Shown piece after piece: positions 3,973 to 36,397 of a DNA stretch of 64,000 nucleotides. The notes below the pieces were generated by a model. That model had not been told where the DNA came from. It searched no databases and worked only from the letters and a program-made list of their open reading frames with translations. A program made the translations under genes and the position numbers. The stretch lies in NCBI GenBank assembly GCA_047495785.1, contig JBLDXI010000015.1, positions 2,666,001 to 2,730,000 of the forward strand, read 5' to 3'. The DNA is from Lepidodermella squamata. Its lineage: Eukaryota > Animalia > Gastrotricha. Positions within the stretch are counted from its first letter, which is position 1; each line of letters starts with the position of its first letter.

Positions 3973-6351
3973 GAAGACTGAGTCTTCGAATTGGGGATTC
4001 GGAACTGTTTGGAAAAATTTAGTGCGAAATTCAATGATGTTTGGTACTGAATTCAATAATTTAGTAATGATTTCACTATATCCCTAAAATTCAAAATCGA
4101 AATTTGATAAGTCTAAATTGCGGATGAAAAGTTAGTTAATGTCATATTTTAGGAAAAGAATTGTCTCACATTCTCGAAAACCTCGAAAAGCCTAAAATCA
4201 CCCCTTTTGGATCTCTTCACATGGGCGGTTTTAAAGGCCGGCCGACACAATAGCTAATCCACAATAGCGAATCCACAATAGCATGCGACTAAATAGCGAG
4301 AATATAGTGATGCCCATAATAGCGAGCGACTATTTAGAAATCCCGGAATAGCGCGCGACACATTAGCGAAATTATCAGTATCACCATAATAGCGAGTGAG
4401 GAAATAGAGAAATTATCCTTATTTAAAAAGTGAACATCAGGTTTTGATCATTATCAACTTGCGTTCATTTTTACAATTTAAGAACGGACGCCTCAAAATT
4501 AAACAGGTAGCACTGGTTTATAGAAATTGCGCCTCTCTATCGCTGAACGATAAAATGTTATCATCGGTTGAGTACCATCATTTTATCAGATGGAAATAGG
4601 TCAGGTTGACCGGCCGGTAAATTGACCGGTCGCTGGTCGGGTATGGGTCGGCTAAATTCCGGTCGGTTGACCAATAAGCTGAACTATTCCCTATTCCAAT
4701 AGCGCGGAGTGCCTATACTTGTGATGCTTTTAGCTGGTAACAATCTAGCCATGTTTATCAACTATGAGATGTTAAGAAGCATGATCATGCTTGGATCTCT
4801 GAGCGATTACCTGCTCTCTACCCATTACTCGAAGCTTAGAAGACTTCTTGGAGAATAAGCGCATGTAAAAGCACTGCGCACCGCTCAATAACCGCAATAA
4901 TGCATTAAATCGCTGATGGTACCAAAAACGTGCGTCCAAGCTCGAATGAACGCGCGAGAGTGAGACATGCGGCGGGCTCCCGCAGCGTGCGCGATACAAA
5001 TCTTGTTAATAGGCGATTACACACCGGATTACACTTCTCTGAGCTAGAGGAGGCGCGTAAGAAGCGGAAAAACCATGTAGCGCACCGCACTCGCTGTGCT
5101 GAGTACTTGAGGATTACCCACAGTCGAGGGCTTTCGCACCTGTTTATAGCCACTTGCTTATTGGTTTATGATAGCTGAAACCTTAATAATTCCAGAGATT
5201 ATGACATTTACTGCGGCAGTTTCAGACCACCATGTACAGTGTGGTCTGATACTAGTGCAGGGGGCGAAGTTCTGATGAATTTCAAGAGTTGCTTTTCCAT
5301 AGAAAAGATCGATGTCGCAATTCATGAAACTCTTCAATATTTCCAAGCTCCTCATTAAAAAGATGAATGAACTTCGCACTCTGCACTACTACATACCAGA
5401 CCACACTGTAGAGAATGATGCACTTGGCCACGGTTTTACAATTTACTGTGGCAGTAACGAATAAAACAATCGGAAAAAAGCCAATTGACTGTCCGGGTCA
5501 AGAATAGGGGTATAATTGAAAAATTTGACCTAAACCTAAACCATGAAAAAATTCACCCTAATTAGGGTTTATACCAGGCTTCCACGTCTCCTATTTTCAA
5601 TATATAATCTGATGTTAACGATATTTCGCACTTCCATTGAGGCCGCCGGTAAAGGAGTGCGCACATACTCGTCATGTAATTTTTTTTGCTAATAAGCAAT
5701 AAGTTTTTTTTGCGGGTCGTATGTGTTTGCAGAAAGAAATCGCATACACCCGCCAGCTCACAAACTGATTTCTTTTTTCCTCGTATGTAATTTCTGATCA
5801 AAGAGGCCACTGAAAAAAATGGCCAACTTTGACGGGGCTCGAACCCTGTCCGCCTGTTGAACAGGCCAACATAATAGCAACTGCACCATGTTGCCATCAC
5901 ATTTTTTTATTACTCTAAACTGGCCGATAATTGGCTGCTAAAGCCATTCGTGCTTTCTGGGTCAAACGCGGGCATGAGTCATGATATTTGACCTAATTGC
6001 TGGCAAGCATCAGGGCATTTTTTGCCTTAAAACCTAATTTATAGGTCACACATTAAGCTTGACGGCTTAGCCAAGTCGATATAATTATCGATGTTTGTGA
6101 GAGCGTCAAGGGTTCGTCTCAACGTGCCGCCATCGCTTTTTTCGACGACTTGACGGAGCAAAAAGAAATTACATAAGAGGAAAAAAGAAATCAAGGTCTC
6201 CGCACAAACTCCGTATCTTTTTTTTTGCTTACGCATACGACCAATCACTTACGCAAACGGCGAAAAACATACGACCACATACGCACCCTATTCACAAACT
6301 CTGCATGCGTATGCGTTATGTCTTTGCTGAACGGCGTTGTCACCTAAAAAA

Positions 6352-29645: not shown

Positions 29646-32600
29646 ATGAATTTCACTAGAATTTTTCGGTGCTGTCGCCATTTTCCTTACCTGCGTTTCA
29701 TCCTAACCGTGTCTGTTCTATGCAATCTATGGGCACTTTACGCATTTCTTCGTCCGAACCGAAAATTCAACCTGATTTTAAGCGGTAAACCGCCTAATGG
29801 TTCACCTCGAAATTCTACCTCAATCGCCTGGCTAGATAATCTCATCGATGCAAGCCCTGCAGGGTCGTTGCAGGTCTATCTGCCAGAAAATCGCGCCTTC
29901 ACGCTGCCGCCAGATGAAAAATGTCAACTAGTCACAGGAAAACGAATCGTGGCGACCTACGCCTCACACGGCCGTTACGTCGCAAGTGCCCAAATTCAGT
30001 GCCAAAATGCTGTGGCAATTCGTGGCATCGATGCTTGTCTCGTGGTAATGCCGAAATTTATGGATGAGGCGTTTTACAAGCGGAATATCGCGAAAATACT
30101 GTCTATCGAACGAGGTGCTGGGCTTTGGTTGTGGAAGCCTTATGTTATTTTGAAAATTATGCTCGAAATGACCAAGGATGATGTTTTGCTCTATATGGAT
30201 GCTGATAAATACCTGGTATACAACCTCGAGGAATATGTCTGTCTACAGGTGAATTTTCATTTATTATTTATTAGCTAAATTAGATACTCTAAATTGAGGC
30301 TTCAACTTTAGATTTTCCCAGTATATAGGTTTTTTGAAATTATAGTTCTTTATTTATTAATTTTTTAACTGATAGAGGGCGTTCCTGATCTAGCAACTTA
30401 TTTCACCCAACCGTGCACTCGCTCAATTTCTTCGCCCAATTTCCCATCCGCCCAGCCAATTCACTTACCACTACAATTTAAATTTCACACACACATACAA
30501 GACGCACCTTAATCTTCGTAGCCCCAGGGGACGGTGGTGATATTCTATTTTCCGATACTATTGATTGCGGCTCCAATCCAGGTAAACTAAGGAGCGAGGT
30601 TCCGGCGAAGCGACGGGTGCGCTGATAGGGCCATTTGACGCCGCGAAAGAGTGCGTTATGAAAGCAAGCTGAGCCGGACGGCTTCTCGGTCAACAGTTTA
30701 TTCTTCGGCGGCCTACCGTGTTTACTACCGCGTTCTACCACTTCATACTATCTGTTTGCATAGCGGCGGTACAGTTACAATGAGTAGCAATTAAACGCGC
30801 GGAAATATTAAGGTGGGTTAATAAGGTATGGCTTTTTTAATGGCCGCAATGTTTTTTGTCACATTAAAAAGGTGGGCAATAAAAATCACTTTTGGCAAAT
30901 TTTTTTTTGCAATCTTTGCGAACCTAGCTTATATTTCATTTCAACAGTAAGCAATTTTTCAACCGATATTAATCTGATGAACACCAACATCAGCAACATC
31001 AACAAGAAAATAAACAGTTCATCGCGTGCGCGTGCAAACAATTTCTAATTTAATTTAATAAGTAGGTTGGGCGAATTGAAAGTTGGGCGATTAAGCTGAA
31101 CGAGTGCGCGGTTGGGTGAATCATGTTGAACGGGAATCACCCAACTGAGAGTACGAGGTAGGTTACCGTAAATTGGGGCAAAATGGCCGCGGGAAAAAAA
31201 TGACCCCTTGTTTTTTTCGCATTTTTACACGTTTCAAAGGGTCCTGATTCCGATTTTATAGGAAGCTCATTTTGCCCCAGGTTTGGGGCAAATTGGACAG
31301 GTGTTTTGGGGCTAATTGGCCATCCTTATCCTTATAATGGGTTTTTAATATTTGATGATTGTGAGGGTTGAATGGTCGAGTGGTAGTAATCTGCAGTATA
31401 TGCGTGTCTGAGTCATATGGATGGCGATGGTTCGAGTCCTGCGGCGGCGGCATTTTTTTTACTCTGCTAAATTTTTTTGTAATTTATTATTATTTATGGA
31501 TCTTTTATCAGCATTTTGTCGATGTAATGTCAGTCATTTCCGCTCCCGTGACTGTATCGCTCGATGAAGACATGATTTATATTTGATCCTTTTGTATTGA
31601 ATATTGAAATATTAAGATTTTAACAAACTTTTCGTAAGATCTTTATTATTACTCTTCAACTGCCAACAAACGAGAGAAAAATATATGAATTGCCAACAAT
31701 TAGGCCAACAAGAATTGCATAGGAGTAGATATCACATGTTTTCAATGGAATCTGATCGTAGTTATCACAAGCCGTGTAAATCAGCTAGAAAGACGACGGA
31801 GATTTCATGAAGGTCGATATCGATGCAGAACGCCATCGATAACATTGACGCGAAAATTAGGCGGAGGTCCCTTGAACGGCAACCCTCGCTGAATCACAGA
31901 ATAATAATGATCGGAACCATTATAGGCTAGGTGAAGCTGACGATCCGTAGTTAGGCGGCTACCAAACGCCGGAAATACGCAAGAGGACGAATAGTTGTGA
32001 ACTATTACGTCGACTTGATATAATCGAGCGAAGGCGACCAAAGTGTCGTTGTCGCCCCATGTTTCGGCATTACTGGCATCAAAGCCATTGGACAGGGATA
32101 GAACTGCAAATTAAAGAAGAAATAGCCATATTAAGATCATTTTGTAACCCAAGTTTAGGAGGCTTCTTACCTCTTTCAGTTAAAGTGGCTAATTTATCTT
32201 CTTCCACGCCGGTTAAGACATCGATGAATAATAGCGGATTGTCCAAAATATACGACACAACATTTGACAATATCTCGTCAGTCTGTTCAAAGTTGCCTCG
32301 CAGCTGATGATTGAGGGCGTGAAATTGGCACCCACTGTAATGACATTTAAAATTATTACTGAAAAATTACATTATGATCGGCGTTTACCCGTCAGCCGGA
32401 ACGTTGACGAGAATCAAATCAAATGGTCTGAGGCGCTTTTTCAACAGCGTCAATCGTTTATCAGCGCCGGGCACTAACTTCACTTTTGGACCGGGTTTCT
32501 TCTTTGATGGGCGGCCGCGAGATTTCGACGGGGTGGCGGAAGATTTGATGGGTAATTCGTCAACAATTAAATTGGATTCGTTGTTATTTTCGTCGTCGAT

Positions 32601-35600
32601 TTCTGGCAGCTCTGATGTTACCGATGGCGGCTGAACGATATCTTCAATTGTCGAGGACGCTTTTCGTTTACGCTTTCGACTAGCTTTACGCGAAACAATG
32701 GTAACGTTGTCATCGTCGTCTAATTCAATTGTTGACGAGCGACGATTCCTTTCTGTCTCTTTGCGCTCCCTGATTTTAGCCAGATCCTCGACGGATATGC
32801 TCGTTCCAGGCTCCAAGCGGTGCTGACAATCCTTTTTCTTCTTTGTCACAACGCTTTTCTTCATATTTTCCTGCAGAAGTTTCAATATCGATTGACCGAT
32901 ATCAGTTTCCATCAGCTCTACTTTCGACTTTGGCATGTCATACGTCATCGTGATAGCGACCTTGCCATTAGAAGCATCAACCTTGACCTCCGGTAACAAC
33001 ACGGCGACATTTTCTAGGCCTTTATCCGCTTCAGGAATAATTGAATCTTCAAGTGCCTTGACCGGCAGGCGTGACAATCCTCGCTCCATGTCTACTGGCC
33101 AGATTCCGCAAGCTTCAAAACCGGCGATAATGTTGTGCAACTTGCTGCATGCCATGTTCCTTGTTCGTTTTCCCGCGGTTTTGACGCAGGTTATTTCATC
33201 GATGAGCTTCGTAAGCAGCGCCGGAAATGCTGATTTAGGTAAAGTCGTTTGATCGCGATGTGATTCCTTCCATTTTCGAAGGATCTTACGCCAGGCCTTT
33301 TTTAGTGGCCCAAAAAACGCCACATCGAGAGGCTGGCAGACGGAGGTTGCGTTAGGTGGAAGCAGTACGAATGAAATATCATGCTTCTCGCATAACTCGA
33401 GCACTTTGAATGACAAATGACTCGTCAAGTTATCGCCTATGACACACTTTTTGCCTTGGCCTTTCTTTAGATACGGAACGGCAATATTTACGAACCAGTC
33501 TTCAAATGTCGCCATTTCAAACCAGCCGCTTTTCGATATAGAAAATCTAGTCTTTGCCGGAGCTCCGTCGACCCAACTCTCTCGTAGCATTTTCTTAGAG
33601 CGGTAGCAAACGTAGGTAGGCAACATTGTACCGTCAGCGGCACCGCAAAACATAAGAGAAATGCTGGCTTTCGTTGAATTTAAGATACGTCCTGGACGTT
33701 TGGACTTGCGGCGAAAGACGAATTTCTTGCGTTTTCCTGGATCGTCAGTGACGTTAGTTTCATCATAGTTCACTATGAACCTAGGGTCCGCATTCTTCAG
33801 AGTTTGGCGAAGATTGGTATAAAAGACACTGAGTTTCTCTCTTGACAGTTCGGCCTTGGCTGTAGAAATATTTTGCCCAAACTTCTCGCCAATCTCCTTG
33901 TTATGGCGTTCCAGAAACCCGTAGTACCAGTCGACCCCTGGCAAATTGTCTTTAAAACGCACGACTCTTAATCCTTTACCGTCAAGATAAGATTTGACCA
34001 GCAAGCGGACGCCTTCGCCATCGAGAGGGAACCCGAAATCGGCTAGCATGCCTAAATATTTCATAACGGTACGTTCCACTTCATTAGAAAGTGCACACGG
34101 ACGACCCGATCCGACGAGTTCTGATTTCTTTGCTAAACGCTTCAAAGTGGAGCGGGGAAGTTTCATTTGGCCAGCAACTAGTGTAGCCGACTCACCATCT
34201 TGTACGCGCTTGATAGCAATTCGGAGGTCTTCATCGGTGTAGTTCCGGTAGCAGCGGCCACGCTTGGGGTTATACTTTCTAACCATCTAAATCTAAAGAC
34301 AGTAATAAGAATTGAATGCCACACGCCACCGGGGTTTAACATTAAAGATTGTAGATTGAGGAGATTCTCTTTCTCTTCTTTTGATCTGCTCAGCTTCAAC
34401 GTCGTCTTCAATTGACAATAACTTTGAGGTTGGCAACAACGCCGGTTCCATGGCCAGGGTTGTAACGTTGACCATCGACAATTGCGACCAGCCGATGTCC
34501 TGTGGCCCATAACGAATACAGTAACTGTGTTTGATTTTTTTTTACATGCCCGAGACAAGCGCGGTCTGAGCTGCGAATTACCTAACAAAATCCTACAGTT
34601 AGATAACAATGAGCCAATGTAAAGCGGACATGTATCACCTTGATAGCATTGCTGTCGTGGACGTTTGAAGGCTCACAGACGAATTCACAGATATCACCCG
34701 GAAAGCATTTCGCGTTATCAGCAATATGTTGACCAACAAGTAAAACAAAAATCATATCTGAAGGAACCTCGGTCTTAATCATTTTAGATCAGGACTTGAT
34801 CAGCGCAATCAAATTCTCCTGTTAAACAAATGAAATCAGGTGTGTAACCTATAACAAATACCAAAATATGAGCGTCACTCAAATACGTTCGAAACAAGGA
34901 GGGAATAACGGTACAATCAATGTTTTATTTATAATATTAAGACCAGGGCGTTGTGCGGCACGCAGCACACGCTTCGCAAGTCGATCTATTGAAGCGCGTC
35001 TCGCTCTTACGCTAACGTACGCACATTTCTTTATAGCGCCCAACTAATAGTTCAAGAGCAAATAATTATTGATAATTATTAAATGTTAATAATGTTTGGT
35101 TAACAAAACATTAGTTTTAATAATTTACTATAAATTACAAATGCTTTGATGTTAAATTGCCGCAGTATGGGCTCAAATTGCCCCCGTGTTTGAATTTTGC
35201 ATGGGGTAATTTGGCCACGATTACCTGGTCATACCTGTACCATCGCCCCGAGTCGTGCTTTTTTTTCCCGTAATCACAGAAGGCAACGACAGTCGGAAAA
35301 AATAACCTCTGTAGCCCTAGTCTTCGCGTTGGCTCCAGCTAATTCAATTAAAAGGGGTCATTTTTACCTGCCAAAACTCACCTCTGTGCAACAACATGCC
35401 GTGACCTCATTTCGGGACATACCTGGCTGAAAATTAGCAGGCTTGTAAAAGGCTTGTTGATAATTGTCCCCGTAAATTTTTGTAAAGTATTACCTTGTAG
35501 TTGTTGAGCTATCGATAAAAATGTGAAAACCTCAATTTTTGGCCAATTAGCCCCAAAGGTTCATTTTGCCCCAAATGACGGTATATAATATGGGCTCGTC

Positions 35601-36397
35601 GTTATCGATGATGAATATACAAATCGTAAAAAAATTGAGCATGTAACCTCAATTTTTCTTCGAGGAATTGCCGCAATTTTTGAAGTGCGTGTCCCATAAA
35701 TTACTCACTCATGTTGCGTGTCCCATTTAATTTGCGCTACCATTTTCTGAATTTTTCAACTTTTTGCGAATTTTCAAAAAAGTGTATCAGTGTTTTTGCG
35801 AATTTTCATGAATTTTTTTGTTTTCGCTTTTTCTTTAATTTTTGATTATTTAATTTGGATTTTTAATTTCTCTAGGAGCAGCTCAAACAAGACGTTGTAG
35901 TGTTTTACCAAGAATTCAGCGAGCTATCATGGACGAAGGCTGATGCCTATCTGCTGATGAATGTTGAGCATTTGCTGCCCAAGATCGCCACTACAATGCA
36001 GGTGTACGCGAGTTATCTGATGCTGCGAAAGTCTTTCGATTCAATCAGATTCGTCTCTGAATGGTTGACGTATGCTCAAGATGAACGCATCATGAATGAT
36101 GAGCCGAGCAGGTTCAGGCCAGATCTGCCGACTTTCAATCCCGTGAATAACCGGCATGACCAAACTGTGTTGAGTTTGCTGTCGAAGAAATGGAACCTAA
36201 CGGATTGGCCGAGCCCTGAGTGGAATGATGTCGCGCGGTCGCAGAATGGCAGCGATGTCGATGGCATTACAGCTGTCAGCAGCTTCAATCCTTTGAACGT
36301 TGCTGAGCTGAAAAAACTTGGCCTTGTGATACCGACTCGTAAAATCATCAAAAAGGATATAACCGTGAACCTTGGCATTATTGAACTTCCTGTATAA
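29646..36397 (+). CDS. Type II membrane DxD glycosyltransferase-like protein (exons 29646-30248, 35876-36397; 5.6 kb TE-filled intron)
   Basis: N-terminal TM; RGAGLWLWKPYVI, LYMDAD, WTKAD and RHDQTVLSLL motifs; CAG/GT and TAG/G phase-0 junction. Confidence 0.75.
30377..31142. mobile_element. MULE-like MITE
   Basis: Imperfect long TIRs (TTCACCCAACCG motif); 9 bp flanks AACTGATAG / AACTGAGAG. Confidence 0.6.
31365..31460 (+). ncRNA. tRNA-like Pol III cassette inside the pogo element
   Basis: A box TGGTCGAGTGG, B box GGTTCGAGTCC, T8 terminator; no valid cloverleaf. Confidence 0.5.
31805..34286 (-). CDS. pogo transposase (psq HTH, CENP-B HTH, DDE_1) spliced to a C-terminal OTU deubiquitinase domain (exons 34286-32389, 32334-32171, 32103-31805)
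   Basis: NYDET, GDNLTSH and QPLDV with DD35D spacing; spliced product continues VPADGGCQFHAL ... WGDNDTLVAFARLYQVDVIV ... HLAYNGSDHYYSV. Confidence 0.88.
34408..34782 (-). CDS. Stand-alone HIRAN-domain protein encoded by the pogo element (exons 34782-34639, 34581-34408)
   Basis: Spliced ORF of ~105 aa with EPSNVHDSNAIKV..RACLGHVKK, matching the HIRAN consensus EPxNxxDxNAIxV...xGHV. Confidence 0.8.

What the first reader, a model, noticed from the sequence alone, without database searches (positions are those of the whole stretch)
31166..35581. pogo DNA transposon encoding a HIRAN protein and a transposase-OTU deubiquitinase fusion
Seen: TIRs and TA TSD bound two same-strand spliced genes, a ~105 aa HIRAN-like protein (34782-34408) followed about 120 bp later by a DD35D transposase extended by two introns into an OTU domain. 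Both accessory domains are fragmented in the raw ORF track. Known: pogo elements usually encode only a transposase; HIRAN (HLTF/Rad5) binds free 3'-OH ssDNA ends at stalled forks; OTU domains cleave ubiquitin. Inference: the element may recognise 3'-OH ends (its own excised ends or stalled forks) and edit local ubiquitin marks to steer repair, choose targets or escape silencing. I do not know of this combination in a pogo element.
Basis: partly seen in the sequence, partly recalled or inferred. Interest (0 to 1): 0.92.

Follow-up and report, generated by a model that had tools for sequence, protein, structure and literature searches.

The report
Pogo transposon carrying HIRAN and OTU
This is a real, transcribed cut-and-paste pogo transposon whose transposase is spliced to a ubiquitin-removing (OTU) protease domain and which also carries a small gene resembling the DNA-3'-end-binding HIRAN domain, a combination I found in none of the transposon papers I could search.

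Summary
Window 31166-35581 is a 4,416-bp pogo element with 20-bp inverted ends, TA duplications and five inward-facing end motifs.

It carries two minus-strand genes:
- a 105-aa, two-exon small gene;
- a 786-aa, three-exon gene: DD35D transposase, AT-hook linker, OTU domain.

Evidence for the gene models:
- The OTU call is solid. Exon profiles hit solved OTUD3 (E 8e-9) and OTUD5, and the catalytic Cys and His are kept.
- The HIRAN call is probable but below Pfam's cut-off when tested exon by exon.
- Two diverged paralogs in this genome (53-56% transposase identity) and a contig from another sample keep the same exons and intron positions.
- Every exon has pN far below pS.
- Contigs of a run guessed to be RNA show the HIRAN intron and the second OTU intron spliced. 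The first OTU intron rests on comparison only.
- About 50 MITEs of roughly 1 kb share this copy's exact termini.

OTU fused to a transposase is known for Ginger1, and OTU domains occur in Helitrons. I found no report for pogo, and none of HIRAN in a eukaryotic transposon. The proposed function, end binding plus deubiquitination at the break, is inference.

The scan had already noted this architecture on other DNA of this genome (a paralog).

The parts
31164..31165 (.). TA target-site duplication (3' side in gene sense)
   Evidence: All 18 sampled MITE copies and both paralogs are also flanked by TA.
35582..35583 (.). TA target-site duplication (5' side in gene sense)
31166..31185 (.). Terminal inverted repeat, 3' end of the element in gene sense
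   Evidence: pair I1. The termini are identical in 18 of 18 sampled MITEs.
35562..35581 (.). Terminal inverted repeat, 5' end of the element in gene sense
   Evidence: pair I1.
31173..31316 (+). Three copies of the motif TTGGGGC[AT]AA[AT] (31173-31183, 31283-31293, 31306-31316), facing inward. Inferred transposase binding sites.
   Evidence: 5 matches in the 64-kb window, all at the element's ends; 0.23 expected, and 0 of 100 shuffles reach 5.
35546..35574 (-). Two copies of the same motif (35546-35556, 35564-35574), facing inward
35174..35581 (-). 5' non-coding end (element positions 1-408), shared at 80-86% identity (one partial copy 93%) with a family of roughly 1-kb MITEs
34639..34782 (-). 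HIRAN-like gene, exon 1 (48 codons from the ATG). Holds the invariant N-x-H-D-x-x-A-I-K motif.
   Evidence: Pfam HIRAN is the only hit: E 0.0036 on the ORF and 0.061 on the exon, model positions 19-45. Conserved at 61-67% in the paralogs.
34582..34638 (-). Intron of the HIRAN-like gene (57 nt, GT..AG)
   Evidence: A contig of run X1 skips exactly these 57 nt. The position is identical in the C3 and C4 paralogs.
34408..34581 (-). HIRAN-like gene, exon 2 (57 codons plus TGA)
   Evidence: Atlas feature search: best score 0.93, 196 of 256 shared features, 85 of 100 hits in HIRAN clusters. The Pfam HIRAN genome scan spans both exons: 21.7 bits, E 0.013, the only candidate in 121 Mb.
34287..34407 (-). 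121-nt spacer between the two genes, transcribed in X1
   Evidence: X1 contig at 34337-34418 (table 8). An AG lies directly before the ATG.
32389..34286 (-). Transposase exon 1 (632 codons plus 2 nt). N-terminal HTH; DDE_1 at aa 207-349; D175 (33764-33762), D285 (33434-33432), D321 (33326-33324); basic linker with AT hook at aa 590; the last ~20 codons encode the start of the OTU domain, ending in ...VPAD-G.
   Evidence: The tail motif is conserved in four sequences.
32335..32388 (-). Intron 1 of the transposase-OTU gene (54 nt, GT..AG, phase 2). It splits the D-G-x-C motif. If retained, a stop follows at once and gives an OTU-less 633-aa transposase.
   Evidence: Position and phase are conserved in C3, C4 and L026. 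Not seen in the listed RNA joints.
32171..32334 (-). OTU exon 2; catalytic Cys codon 32330-32328
   Evidence: Profile A4 hits OTUD5 (3pfy, E 0.0014) and OTUD1 (4bop, E 0.013). In the printed OTUD5 alignment the Cys aligns with the C of that chain's C-L-F-R-A motif.
32104..32170 (-). Intron 2 of the transposase-OTU gene (67 nt, GT..AG, phase 1)
   Evidence: X1 loose ends at 32105 and 32171 read straight from exon 3 into exon 2. Conserved in C3, C4 and L026.
31805..32103 (-). OTU exon 3 plus TGA; catalytic His codon 31909-31907 (D-H-Y-Y-S-V)
   Evidence: Profile A3 hits OTUD3 (4bou) at E 8.3e-9. It gives 116 hits in 1.84 billion representatives; the six longer ones scanned carry Pfam OTU above the cut-off.
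31166..31477 (-). 3' non-coding end (element positions ~4105-4416), shared at 84-98% identity with the MITE family

Best explanation
This is an autonomous transposon of the pogo superfamily, the cognate partner of a family of about 50 MITEs.

Shown:
- TIRs, TA TSDs and clustered end motifs.
- A DD35D DDE_1 transposase.
- An OTUD3-like OTU domain whose first strand and D-G lie in the transposase exon, so it can only be made as a fusion.
- A separate 105-aa HIRAN-like gene 121 nt upstream.
- The same five exons and three intron positions in three diverged lineages of this genome and, for the OTU part, in a contig from another sample.
- pN far below pS in every exon.
- Transcription, and splicing of two of the three introns.

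Inferred mechanism: the transposase binds the end motifs and cuts and pastes the element at TA. The small HIRAN-like protein holds the free 3'-OH DNA ends that excision and integration create. The OTU domain is tethered to the transpososome through the AT-hook linker. There it removes ubiquitin chains, either from the transposase itself or from break-response factors such as PCNA or chromatin proteins. The complex would then be stabilised and repair steered in the element's favour. Retention of intron 1 would give an OTU-less transposase, a possible regulatory switch.
For: Anatomy.
OTU; Cys and His are invariant.
OTU begins in the transposase exon: tail motif R-L-x-P-F-x-L-...-[DN]-G conserved in the window copy, C3, C4 and L026.
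HIRAN-like.
Same layout in paralogs.
Selection: pN 0.17-0.47 against pS 0.64-1.05 in every exon.
RNA: joint skipping 34582-34638; exon 2-exon 3 junction in loose ends; X1 coverage over the coding part (31758-34865) and the MITE-shared ends, none over the non-coding 31314-31757 and 34866-35309.
Activity: 18 of 18 MITEs have identical 22-bp termini and TA TSDs, median pairwise identity 95.6%, maximum 99.9%; X2 depth at the ends is about 50 times the unique depth.
Precedent: a role of transposon OTU/Ulp1 domains in transposition or repair was proposed in PMC2836005; Helitron-borne VTD deubiquitinase domains (a different DUB class) are active enzymes, but no transposon OTU domain has been assayed (PMC9741609).
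Against: - No biochemical test exists.
- HIRAN is below Pfam's cut-off (21.7 bits against 24.7) and was not found by profile searches of the PDB or in PHROGs.
- Splicing of intron 1 was not seen in RNA.
- X1 is only guessed to be RNA, and each junction rests on 1-3 short contigs.
- Each lineage has a single full-length copy, and the C4 copy has a frameshift in the linker.
- The C3 copy has N instead of D in the D-G-x-C motif.
- No PIP box links the transposase to PCNA.
Confidence: 0.55

Rival explanations
1. The small upstream gene is not a HIRAN domain, or does not bind DNA ends. It would be an unrelated small accessory protein, for instance a regulator or inhibitor of transposition, and the HIRAN resemblance is chance.
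For: Every profile hit is below threshold. PDB profile searches, PHROGs and phage tblastn found nothing. No homologs appeared in the large protein database. The fold of exon 2 alone was poor (pLDDT 67) and matched nothing.
Against: Two different methods on the two different exons point to the same family: Pfam on exon 1 in two paralogs, and language-model features on exon 2 (0.93, 85 of 100 hits). It is the only HIRAN candidate in a 121-Mb six-frame scan, at E 0.013, and that match covers model positions 20-76 across both exons. The invariant residues sit in the motif that Pfam aligns.
Confidence: 0.15
2. The OTU domain does not act on ubiquitin at DNA breaks. It might instead process the fusion protein (as some viral OTU proteases cut polyproteins), cleave another ubiquitin-like modifier, or merely bind ubiquitin.
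For: No activity data exist for any transposon OTU domain (PMC9741609 says none has been tested). The C3 copy has N for D in the D-G-x-C motif. The long basic linker could hold a cleavage site.
Against: Cys and His are invariant in all copies. The nearest relatives are cellular OTUD3-type deubiquitinases.
Confidence: 0.15
3. The modules are passengers or relics: captured host fragments with no role for the element, or the three loci are domesticated host genes and no longer transposons.
For: Each lineage has only one full-length copy. Close relatives are very rare in public data.
Against: pN is far below pS in all accessory exons across three lineages whose synonymous sites are saturated. All three loci keep TIRs and TA TSDs at different places. 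A MITE family with this copy's exact termini has copies up to 99.9% alike.
Confidence: 0.07
4. The gene model is wrong: the OTU exons form a separate gene and are not fused to the transposase.
For: Intron 1 was not seen spliced in the listed RNA joints, and X1 depth is near zero there.
Against: Exon 2 has no start codon. The first part of the OTU domain, up to D-G, lies in the transposase exon and is conserved in four sequences. The frame is restored only by the GT..AG intron, at the same phase in all four.
Confidence: 0.05

Closest known systems
pogo superfamily transposons (Fot-like/Passer end of the range, as surveyed in PMC7386202)
   Same: DDE_1 catalytic domain, DD35D triad, short TIRs, TA TSD, and a 4.4-kb length inside the reported 1.2-5.2 kb range. 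The nearest database transposases carry HTH_psq plus DDE_1.
   Different: That survey reports no OTU, HIRAN or ubiquitin-related domain in any pogo element. None of the 120 best transposase homologs (at most 45% identity) has an OTU domain or the tail motif. I did not build a tree, so the family within pogo is not settled.
Ginger1 transposons with a C-terminal OTU (or Ulp1) domain
   Same: A cut-and-paste DDE transposase with an OTU cysteine-protease domain fused at its C-terminus, often across an intron (PMC2836005).
   Different: The Ginger1 transposase is a Gypsy-integrase relative, not a pogo/IS630 relative. No HIRAN partner is described.
Helitron/Helentron proteins with OTU or VTD deubiquitinase domains
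   Same: A transposon-borne deubiquitinase-type domain. The VTD domains were shown to cleave ubiquitin (PMC9741609).
   Different: These are rolling-circle elements in which the domain is part of a RepHel protein. Their OTU domains have not been tested, and no HIRAN is described.
OTUD3 (solved OTU domain, PDB 4bou)
   Same: Best solved match of exon 3 (E 8.3e-9), with the H-Y-x-S-V catalytic His motif aligned. The database relatives of 250-411 aa that I scanned have a single N-terminal OTU domain, which I take to be the OTUD3 type.
   Different: Here the domain has no protein of its own and hangs on a transposase. The host-like OTU gene at C13:2511523-2511900 has no intron in the domain, whereas the element's has two.
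HIRAN domain of HLTF/Rad5 and stand-alone bacterial HIRAN proteins
   Same: Weak profile match over model positions 20-76, and language-model similarity to small bacterial HIRAN clusters. From my own memory of HLTF, not tested here: the N-x-[YH]-D-x-N-A-I-K-V and G-H-[LV]-K-K stretches look alike, and the conserved Asp would be the one that contacts the 3'-OH.
   Different: A stand-alone 105-aa protein encoded by a eukaryotic transposon, with no SNF2 or RING part. It is paired with a ubiquitin-removing rather than a ubiquitin-adding enzyme.

Membership tests
pogo superfamily (IS630-Tc1-mariner group) | DDE_1-type transposase catalytic domain | tested here: met
   PF03184, E 1.6e-17, 64 bits against a cut-off of 22.
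pogo superfamily (IS630-Tc1-mariner group) | DDD triad with pogo-range spacing (DD29-59D; DD35D in Passer and Fot-like) | tested here: met
   D175, D285, D321, with 35 residues between the last two. The same holds in both paralogs (range from PMC7386202).
pogo superfamily (IS630-Tc1-mariner group) | TIRs and TA target-site duplication | tested here: met
pogo superfamily (IS630-Tc1-mariner group) | N-terminal HTH DNA-binding domain (CENP-B_N, HTH_psq, HTH_Tnp_Tc5 or similar) | tested here: inconclusive
   Only sub-threshold hits in this copy (HTH_7, CENP-B_N, HTH_28; E 0.04-0.12). Most of its nearest relatives carry PF05225 HTH_psq.
OTU cysteine proteases (PF02338) | Significant profile or sequence match to the OTU domain | tested here: met
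   Exon by exon: A3 hits OTUD3 at E 8.3e-9; A4 hits OTUD5 at E 0.0014. The six longer relatives of exon 3 that were scanned are Pfam OTU above the cut-off. Pfam itself gives no hit on single exons. The joined domain was not scanned, by rule.
OTU cysteine proteases (PF02338) | Catalytic Cys in D-G-x-C-x-F-x-A and catalytic His in H-[YF]-x-S-[VI] | tested here: met
   Cys and His are invariant in the three copies and in L026. The Asp of D-G is N in the C3 copy.
OTU cysteine proteases (PF02338) | Deubiquitinase activity | not testable with these tools
   Needs an enzyme assay.
HIRAN domain (PF08797) | Profile match above Pfam's gathering score (24.7 bits) | tested here: inconclusive
   13.6-17.5 bits on exon 1, 14.2 bits on the C3 exon 1, and 21.7 bits read across the intron. 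The joined protein was not scanned, by rule.
HIRAN domain (PF08797) | HIRAN fold | tested here: inconclusive
   Only exon 2 could be folded: pLDDT 67, no meaningful Foldseek match. Language-model features of exon 2 point to HIRAN clusters at 0.93.
HIRAN domain (PF08797) | Binding of free 3'-OH single-stranded DNA ends | not testable with these tools
   Needs a binding assay.
Autonomous, recently active transposon | Open reading frames intact, transcribed, with cognate non-autonomous copies | tested here: met
   Open frames. X1 contigs cover the coding part and show spliced junctions. MITEs have identical termini and reach 99.9% pairwise identity. Actual mobility was not tested.

The most novel reading that the evidence does not exclude
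The element carries a two-part 'reverse Rad5/HLTF' module. The HIRAN protein finds the 3'-OH ends made by excision or integration. The transposase-tethered OTUD3-like enzyme strips the ubiquitin chains that the host's damage-tolerance and break-signalling machinery puts there. The transposon would thus choose its own repair outcome, for example gap filling or copying from the sister chromatid that restores the donor copy, or would escape ubiquitin-dependent removal of the transpososome.
Probability: 0.2. Interest if true: 0.85.

Novelty: new variant of a known kind. Interest (0 to 1): 0.7.

Why it matters
Transposons of several superfamilies have independently picked up ubiquitin- or SUMO-removing proteases, and nobody knows why. 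This is a small, intact, transcribed cut-and-paste element with a ready-made set of MITE substrates. It carries a deubiquitinase-type domain and a probable DNA-end reader together, and both have been kept by selection in three lineages. That makes the question testable: mutate the catalytic Cys or drop the small gene, then measure excision, reintegration, footprints and transposase stability. If the two modules work together at 3' ends, it would be a mobile-element counterpart, of opposite sign, to the HIRAN-plus-ubiquitin-ligase design of Rad5/HLTF. It could also supply a compact end-targeted deubiquitinase as a tool.

Tried and rejected
- Pfam on single OTU exons: no OTU hit. The genome-wide OTU scan did not pick this locus.
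- HIRAN exon profiles against PDB sequences: only chance-level hits.
- PHROGs on six HIRAN exons: nothing.
- tblastn of both HIRAN exons against phages: chance-level only.
- Atlas feature search on exon 1: no usable hit.
- The search for homologous proteins with the exon 1 and exon 2 alignments: no hits. This says nothing about longer proteins.
- AlphaFold of HIRAN exon 2 alone: pLDDT 67, helix 15-26 and strands 31-36 and 51-56. Foldseek against the PDB found nothing below E 1.5. A half domain is not a fair test.
- Metagenome scan with the OTU exon 3 profile: one distant relative only, L028 at 32% identity.
- The 120 best transposase homologs were searched for an OTU motif or the conserved tail: none.
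- PIP box or APIM in the transposase: none.
- Reading the element as a domesticated gene was rejected because of the TIRs, the TSDs and the cognate MITEs.
- Complex prediction was not used. I do not claim a protein-protein contact, and the joined proteins may not be sent.

Full report
**1. What is in the sequence**

The inverted-repeat search finds arms at 31164-31185 and 35562-35583, 22 nt including a flanking TA on each side and 91% complementary.

The motif TTGGGGC[AT]AA[AT] occurs five times in the 64-kb window. All five lie within 150 bp of the two ends and all point inward. Chance expects 0.23, and none of 100 shuffles reaches five. I take them to be transposase binding sites; that is inference.

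**2. Gene models, read on the minus strand**

- Small gene: ATG at 34782, exon 1 to 34639, a 57-nt GT..AG intron (34638-34582), exon 2 to the TGA at 34410-34408. The product is 105 aa.
- Transposase gene: its ATG at 34286 lies 121 nt downstream of that stop. Exon 1 runs to 32389 (632 codons plus 2 nt). A 54-nt intron (32388-32335) follows, then exon 2 (32334-32171), a 67-nt intron (32170-32104) and exon 3 to the TGA at 31807-31805. The three exons add up to 2,361 nt in frame, 786 aa.
- Exon 1 matches Pfam DDE_1 at E 1.6e-17. The triad is D175, D285, D321, with 35 residues between the last two.
- After the catalytic core comes a long basic linker with an AT hook at residue 590. No PIP box is present.

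**3. The OTU domain**

Pfam does not see it on single exons, because the domain is cut in three. Profiles of each exon, built from the three copies in this genome, do find it.

- Exon 3 hits solved OTUD3 (4bou) at E 8.3e-9, with the H-Y-x-S-V motif aligned. OTUD5 and OTU1 follow at chance level (E 0.12 and 1.7).
- Exon 2 hits OTUD5 at E 0.0014 and OTUD1 at E 0.013. In the printed OTUD5 alignment its Cys aligns with the C of that chain's C-L-F-R-A motif, which I take to be the catalytic Cys.
- Against 1.84 billion representative proteins, the exon 3 profile gives 116 hits. The six longer ones I scanned carry Pfam OTU above the cut-off, most as a single N-terminal domain in proteins of 250-411 aa, which I take to be the OTUD3 type.
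- The first part of the domain, R-L-x-P-F-x-L ... [DN]-G, is encoded by the last twenty codons of the transposase exon. Exon 2 has no start codon. The domain can therefore only be made as a fusion.
- If intron 1 is retained, a stop follows at once. An OTU-less transposase is therefore a possible second product; this is inference.

**4. The HIRAN call**

- Exon 1 has HIRAN as its only Pfam hit, at E 0.0036 on the ORF and 0.061 on the exon (model positions 19-45). The same holds for exon 1 of the C3 paralog, at E 0.04.
- A six-frame scan of the whole 121-Mb genome with PF08797 returns a single candidate. It is this gene, read across its intron: model positions 20-76, 21.7 bits, E 0.013, against a cut-off of 24.7.
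- Exon 2 alone has no Pfam hit. A protein-language-model search places it with small HIRAN clusters: 0.93, 196 of 256 shared features, 85 of the 100 best hits.
- Profile searches of PDB sequences, PHROGs, phage tblastn and a fold of exon 2 alone gave nothing.
- From memory, not tested: the invariant N-x-H-D-x-x-A-I-K-V and L-G-H-V-K-K stretches resemble the HLTF HIRAN motifs, including the Asp that contacts the 3'-OH.

I rate HIRAN at about 0.8, but membership stays formally inconclusive. The joined 105-aa and 786-aa proteins were therefore never scanned or folded, and that is the obvious missing test.

**5. Is the layout a family trait?**

Yes. Searching the genome with each exon finds two paralogous elements.

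- C3:1009884-1012833: transposase 53% identical, open.
- C4:1072742-1075698: transposase 56% identical, with a frameshift in the linker.

Both have the same termini (CCGTC.TTTGGGG ...) and TA duplications at unrelated sites. Both have all five exons in the same order and all three introns at the same codon and phase, while intron sequence and length differ.

A 1.2-kb genomic contig from another public sample (L026) has the AT hook, the tail motif and both OTU introns at the same places, at 42-48% identity. A second short contig (L027) holds exon 3.

For every exon and every pair, pN is 0.17-0.47 against pS 0.64-1.05. Synonymous sites are saturated, so dN/dS can only be bounded well below 1. 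Both accessory modules have thus been kept by selection over a long divergence.

**6. Transcription**

One run, X1, which the tool guesses to be RNA, covers the coding part (31758-34865) and the MITE-shared ends, but not the non-coding stretches 31314-31757 and 34866-35309.

- One of its contigs skips exactly the 57-nt HIRAN intron.
- Three loose ends read from 32103 straight into 32171, the exon 2-exon 3 junction.
- The spacer between the genes is covered (34337-34418).
- No listed joint covers intron 1, where depth is near zero.

These are short assembled contigs, so they show presence only.

**7. Activity**

The full-length DNA is unique in the genome, and so are the C3 and C4 elements. The two ends of this copy recur in dozens of elements of 0.9-1.05 kb. 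All 18 that I cut out have its exact 22-bp termini and TA duplications, which the C3 and C4 termini do not match. Their median pairwise identity is 95.6% and the maximum is 99.9%. In a DNA run the ends are about 50 times deeper than the unique part. This copy is therefore the likely driver of a recently amplified MITE family.

**8. What is known**

- OTU (or Ulp1) domains at the C-terminus of a transposase are described for Ginger1. OTU domains are also described in Helitrons, with the suggestion that they act in transposition or repair (PMC2836005).
- Helitron VTD deubiquitinases are active enzymes, but no transposon OTU domain has been assayed (PMC9741609).
- The systematic survey of pogo elements lists DNA-binding and DDE domains only. 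It does not contain the words OTU, HIRAN or ubiquitin (PMC7386202).
- Full-text searches for HIRAN with transposase or transposable element return no eukaryotic transposon.
- None of the 120 best transposase homologs, all at or below 45% identity, carries an OTU domain or the tail motif.
- Repbase and Dfam could not be searched.

Earlier notes of this scan describe the same architecture on another piece of this genome, very likely one of the paralogs, and other OTU- or Ulp1-bearing transposons here. I reached the paralogs independently. This finding is therefore a further copy of something the scan has already reported, not a first sighting.

**9. Verdict**

- It is a new variant of a known kind. 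A pogo transposase fused to an OTUD3-like domain is a new superfamily for a known habit. The companion HIRAN-like gene has no described precedent that I could find in eukaryotic transposons.
- The most likely mechanism is end binding by the small protein and local deubiquitination by the tethered OTU domain, acting during or just after cut-and-paste. I hold this at moderate confidence.

Noticed in passing
window 34427 (run X1): One X1 contig ends at 34427 and continues with 21 A on the + strand, although the genome there is not A-rich. This could be a polyadenylated antisense transcript ending inside HIRAN exon 2, or an assembly artefact.
   Followed up: no
whole genome G000: The Pfam HIRAN scan of all 121 Mb returns only the transposon's gene. 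The host may have no HIRAN protein of its own (no HLTF/Rad5-type gene). The exon-wise first look can miss split domains; it missed both paralogs.
   Followed up: no
L023:3061-4911 (G000:C13, around 4525608-4525742): A 617-aa open frame with no recognised transposase domain ends in the first half of an OTU domain (model positions 2-49, 22.2 bits). An exon 3-like piece lies about 120 bp downstream. This looks like another OTU fusion, with the intron in a different place.
   Followed up: partly
G000:C15:3530692-3530908: Fragments of OTU exon 3 at 69-74% identity to this copy, closer than the C3 and C4 paralogs, about 830 kb away on the same contig, with a stop. Probably a decayed closer relative.
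   Followed up: no
G000:C54:3501134-3501887 (L025); G000:C59:367042-369240 (L024): A heavily degraded copy with ten stops that still shows a transposase piece followed by OTU exon 3. A more distant DDE_1 fragment also has a weak OTU-like piece downstream.
   Followed up: partly
MITE loci L002-L020: In the MITEs, a piece matching element positions ~4105-4274 also occurs in inverted orientation directly after the 408-bp 5' piece. The MITEs therefore carry a long internal inverted duplication of the 3' subterminal region.
   Followed up: no
window 34287-34292 and the same place in L022: An AG (tttag/atttag) lies directly before the transposase ATG, only 121 nt after the upstream gene's stop, and the spacer is transcribed. 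Together with an earlier scan note on operon-like junctions near this window, this suggests a two-gene operon resolved by trans-splicing. Not tested.
   Followed up: no
window 35900-36397 (+): A 165-aa open frame just outside the element has no Pfam match.
   Followed up: partly
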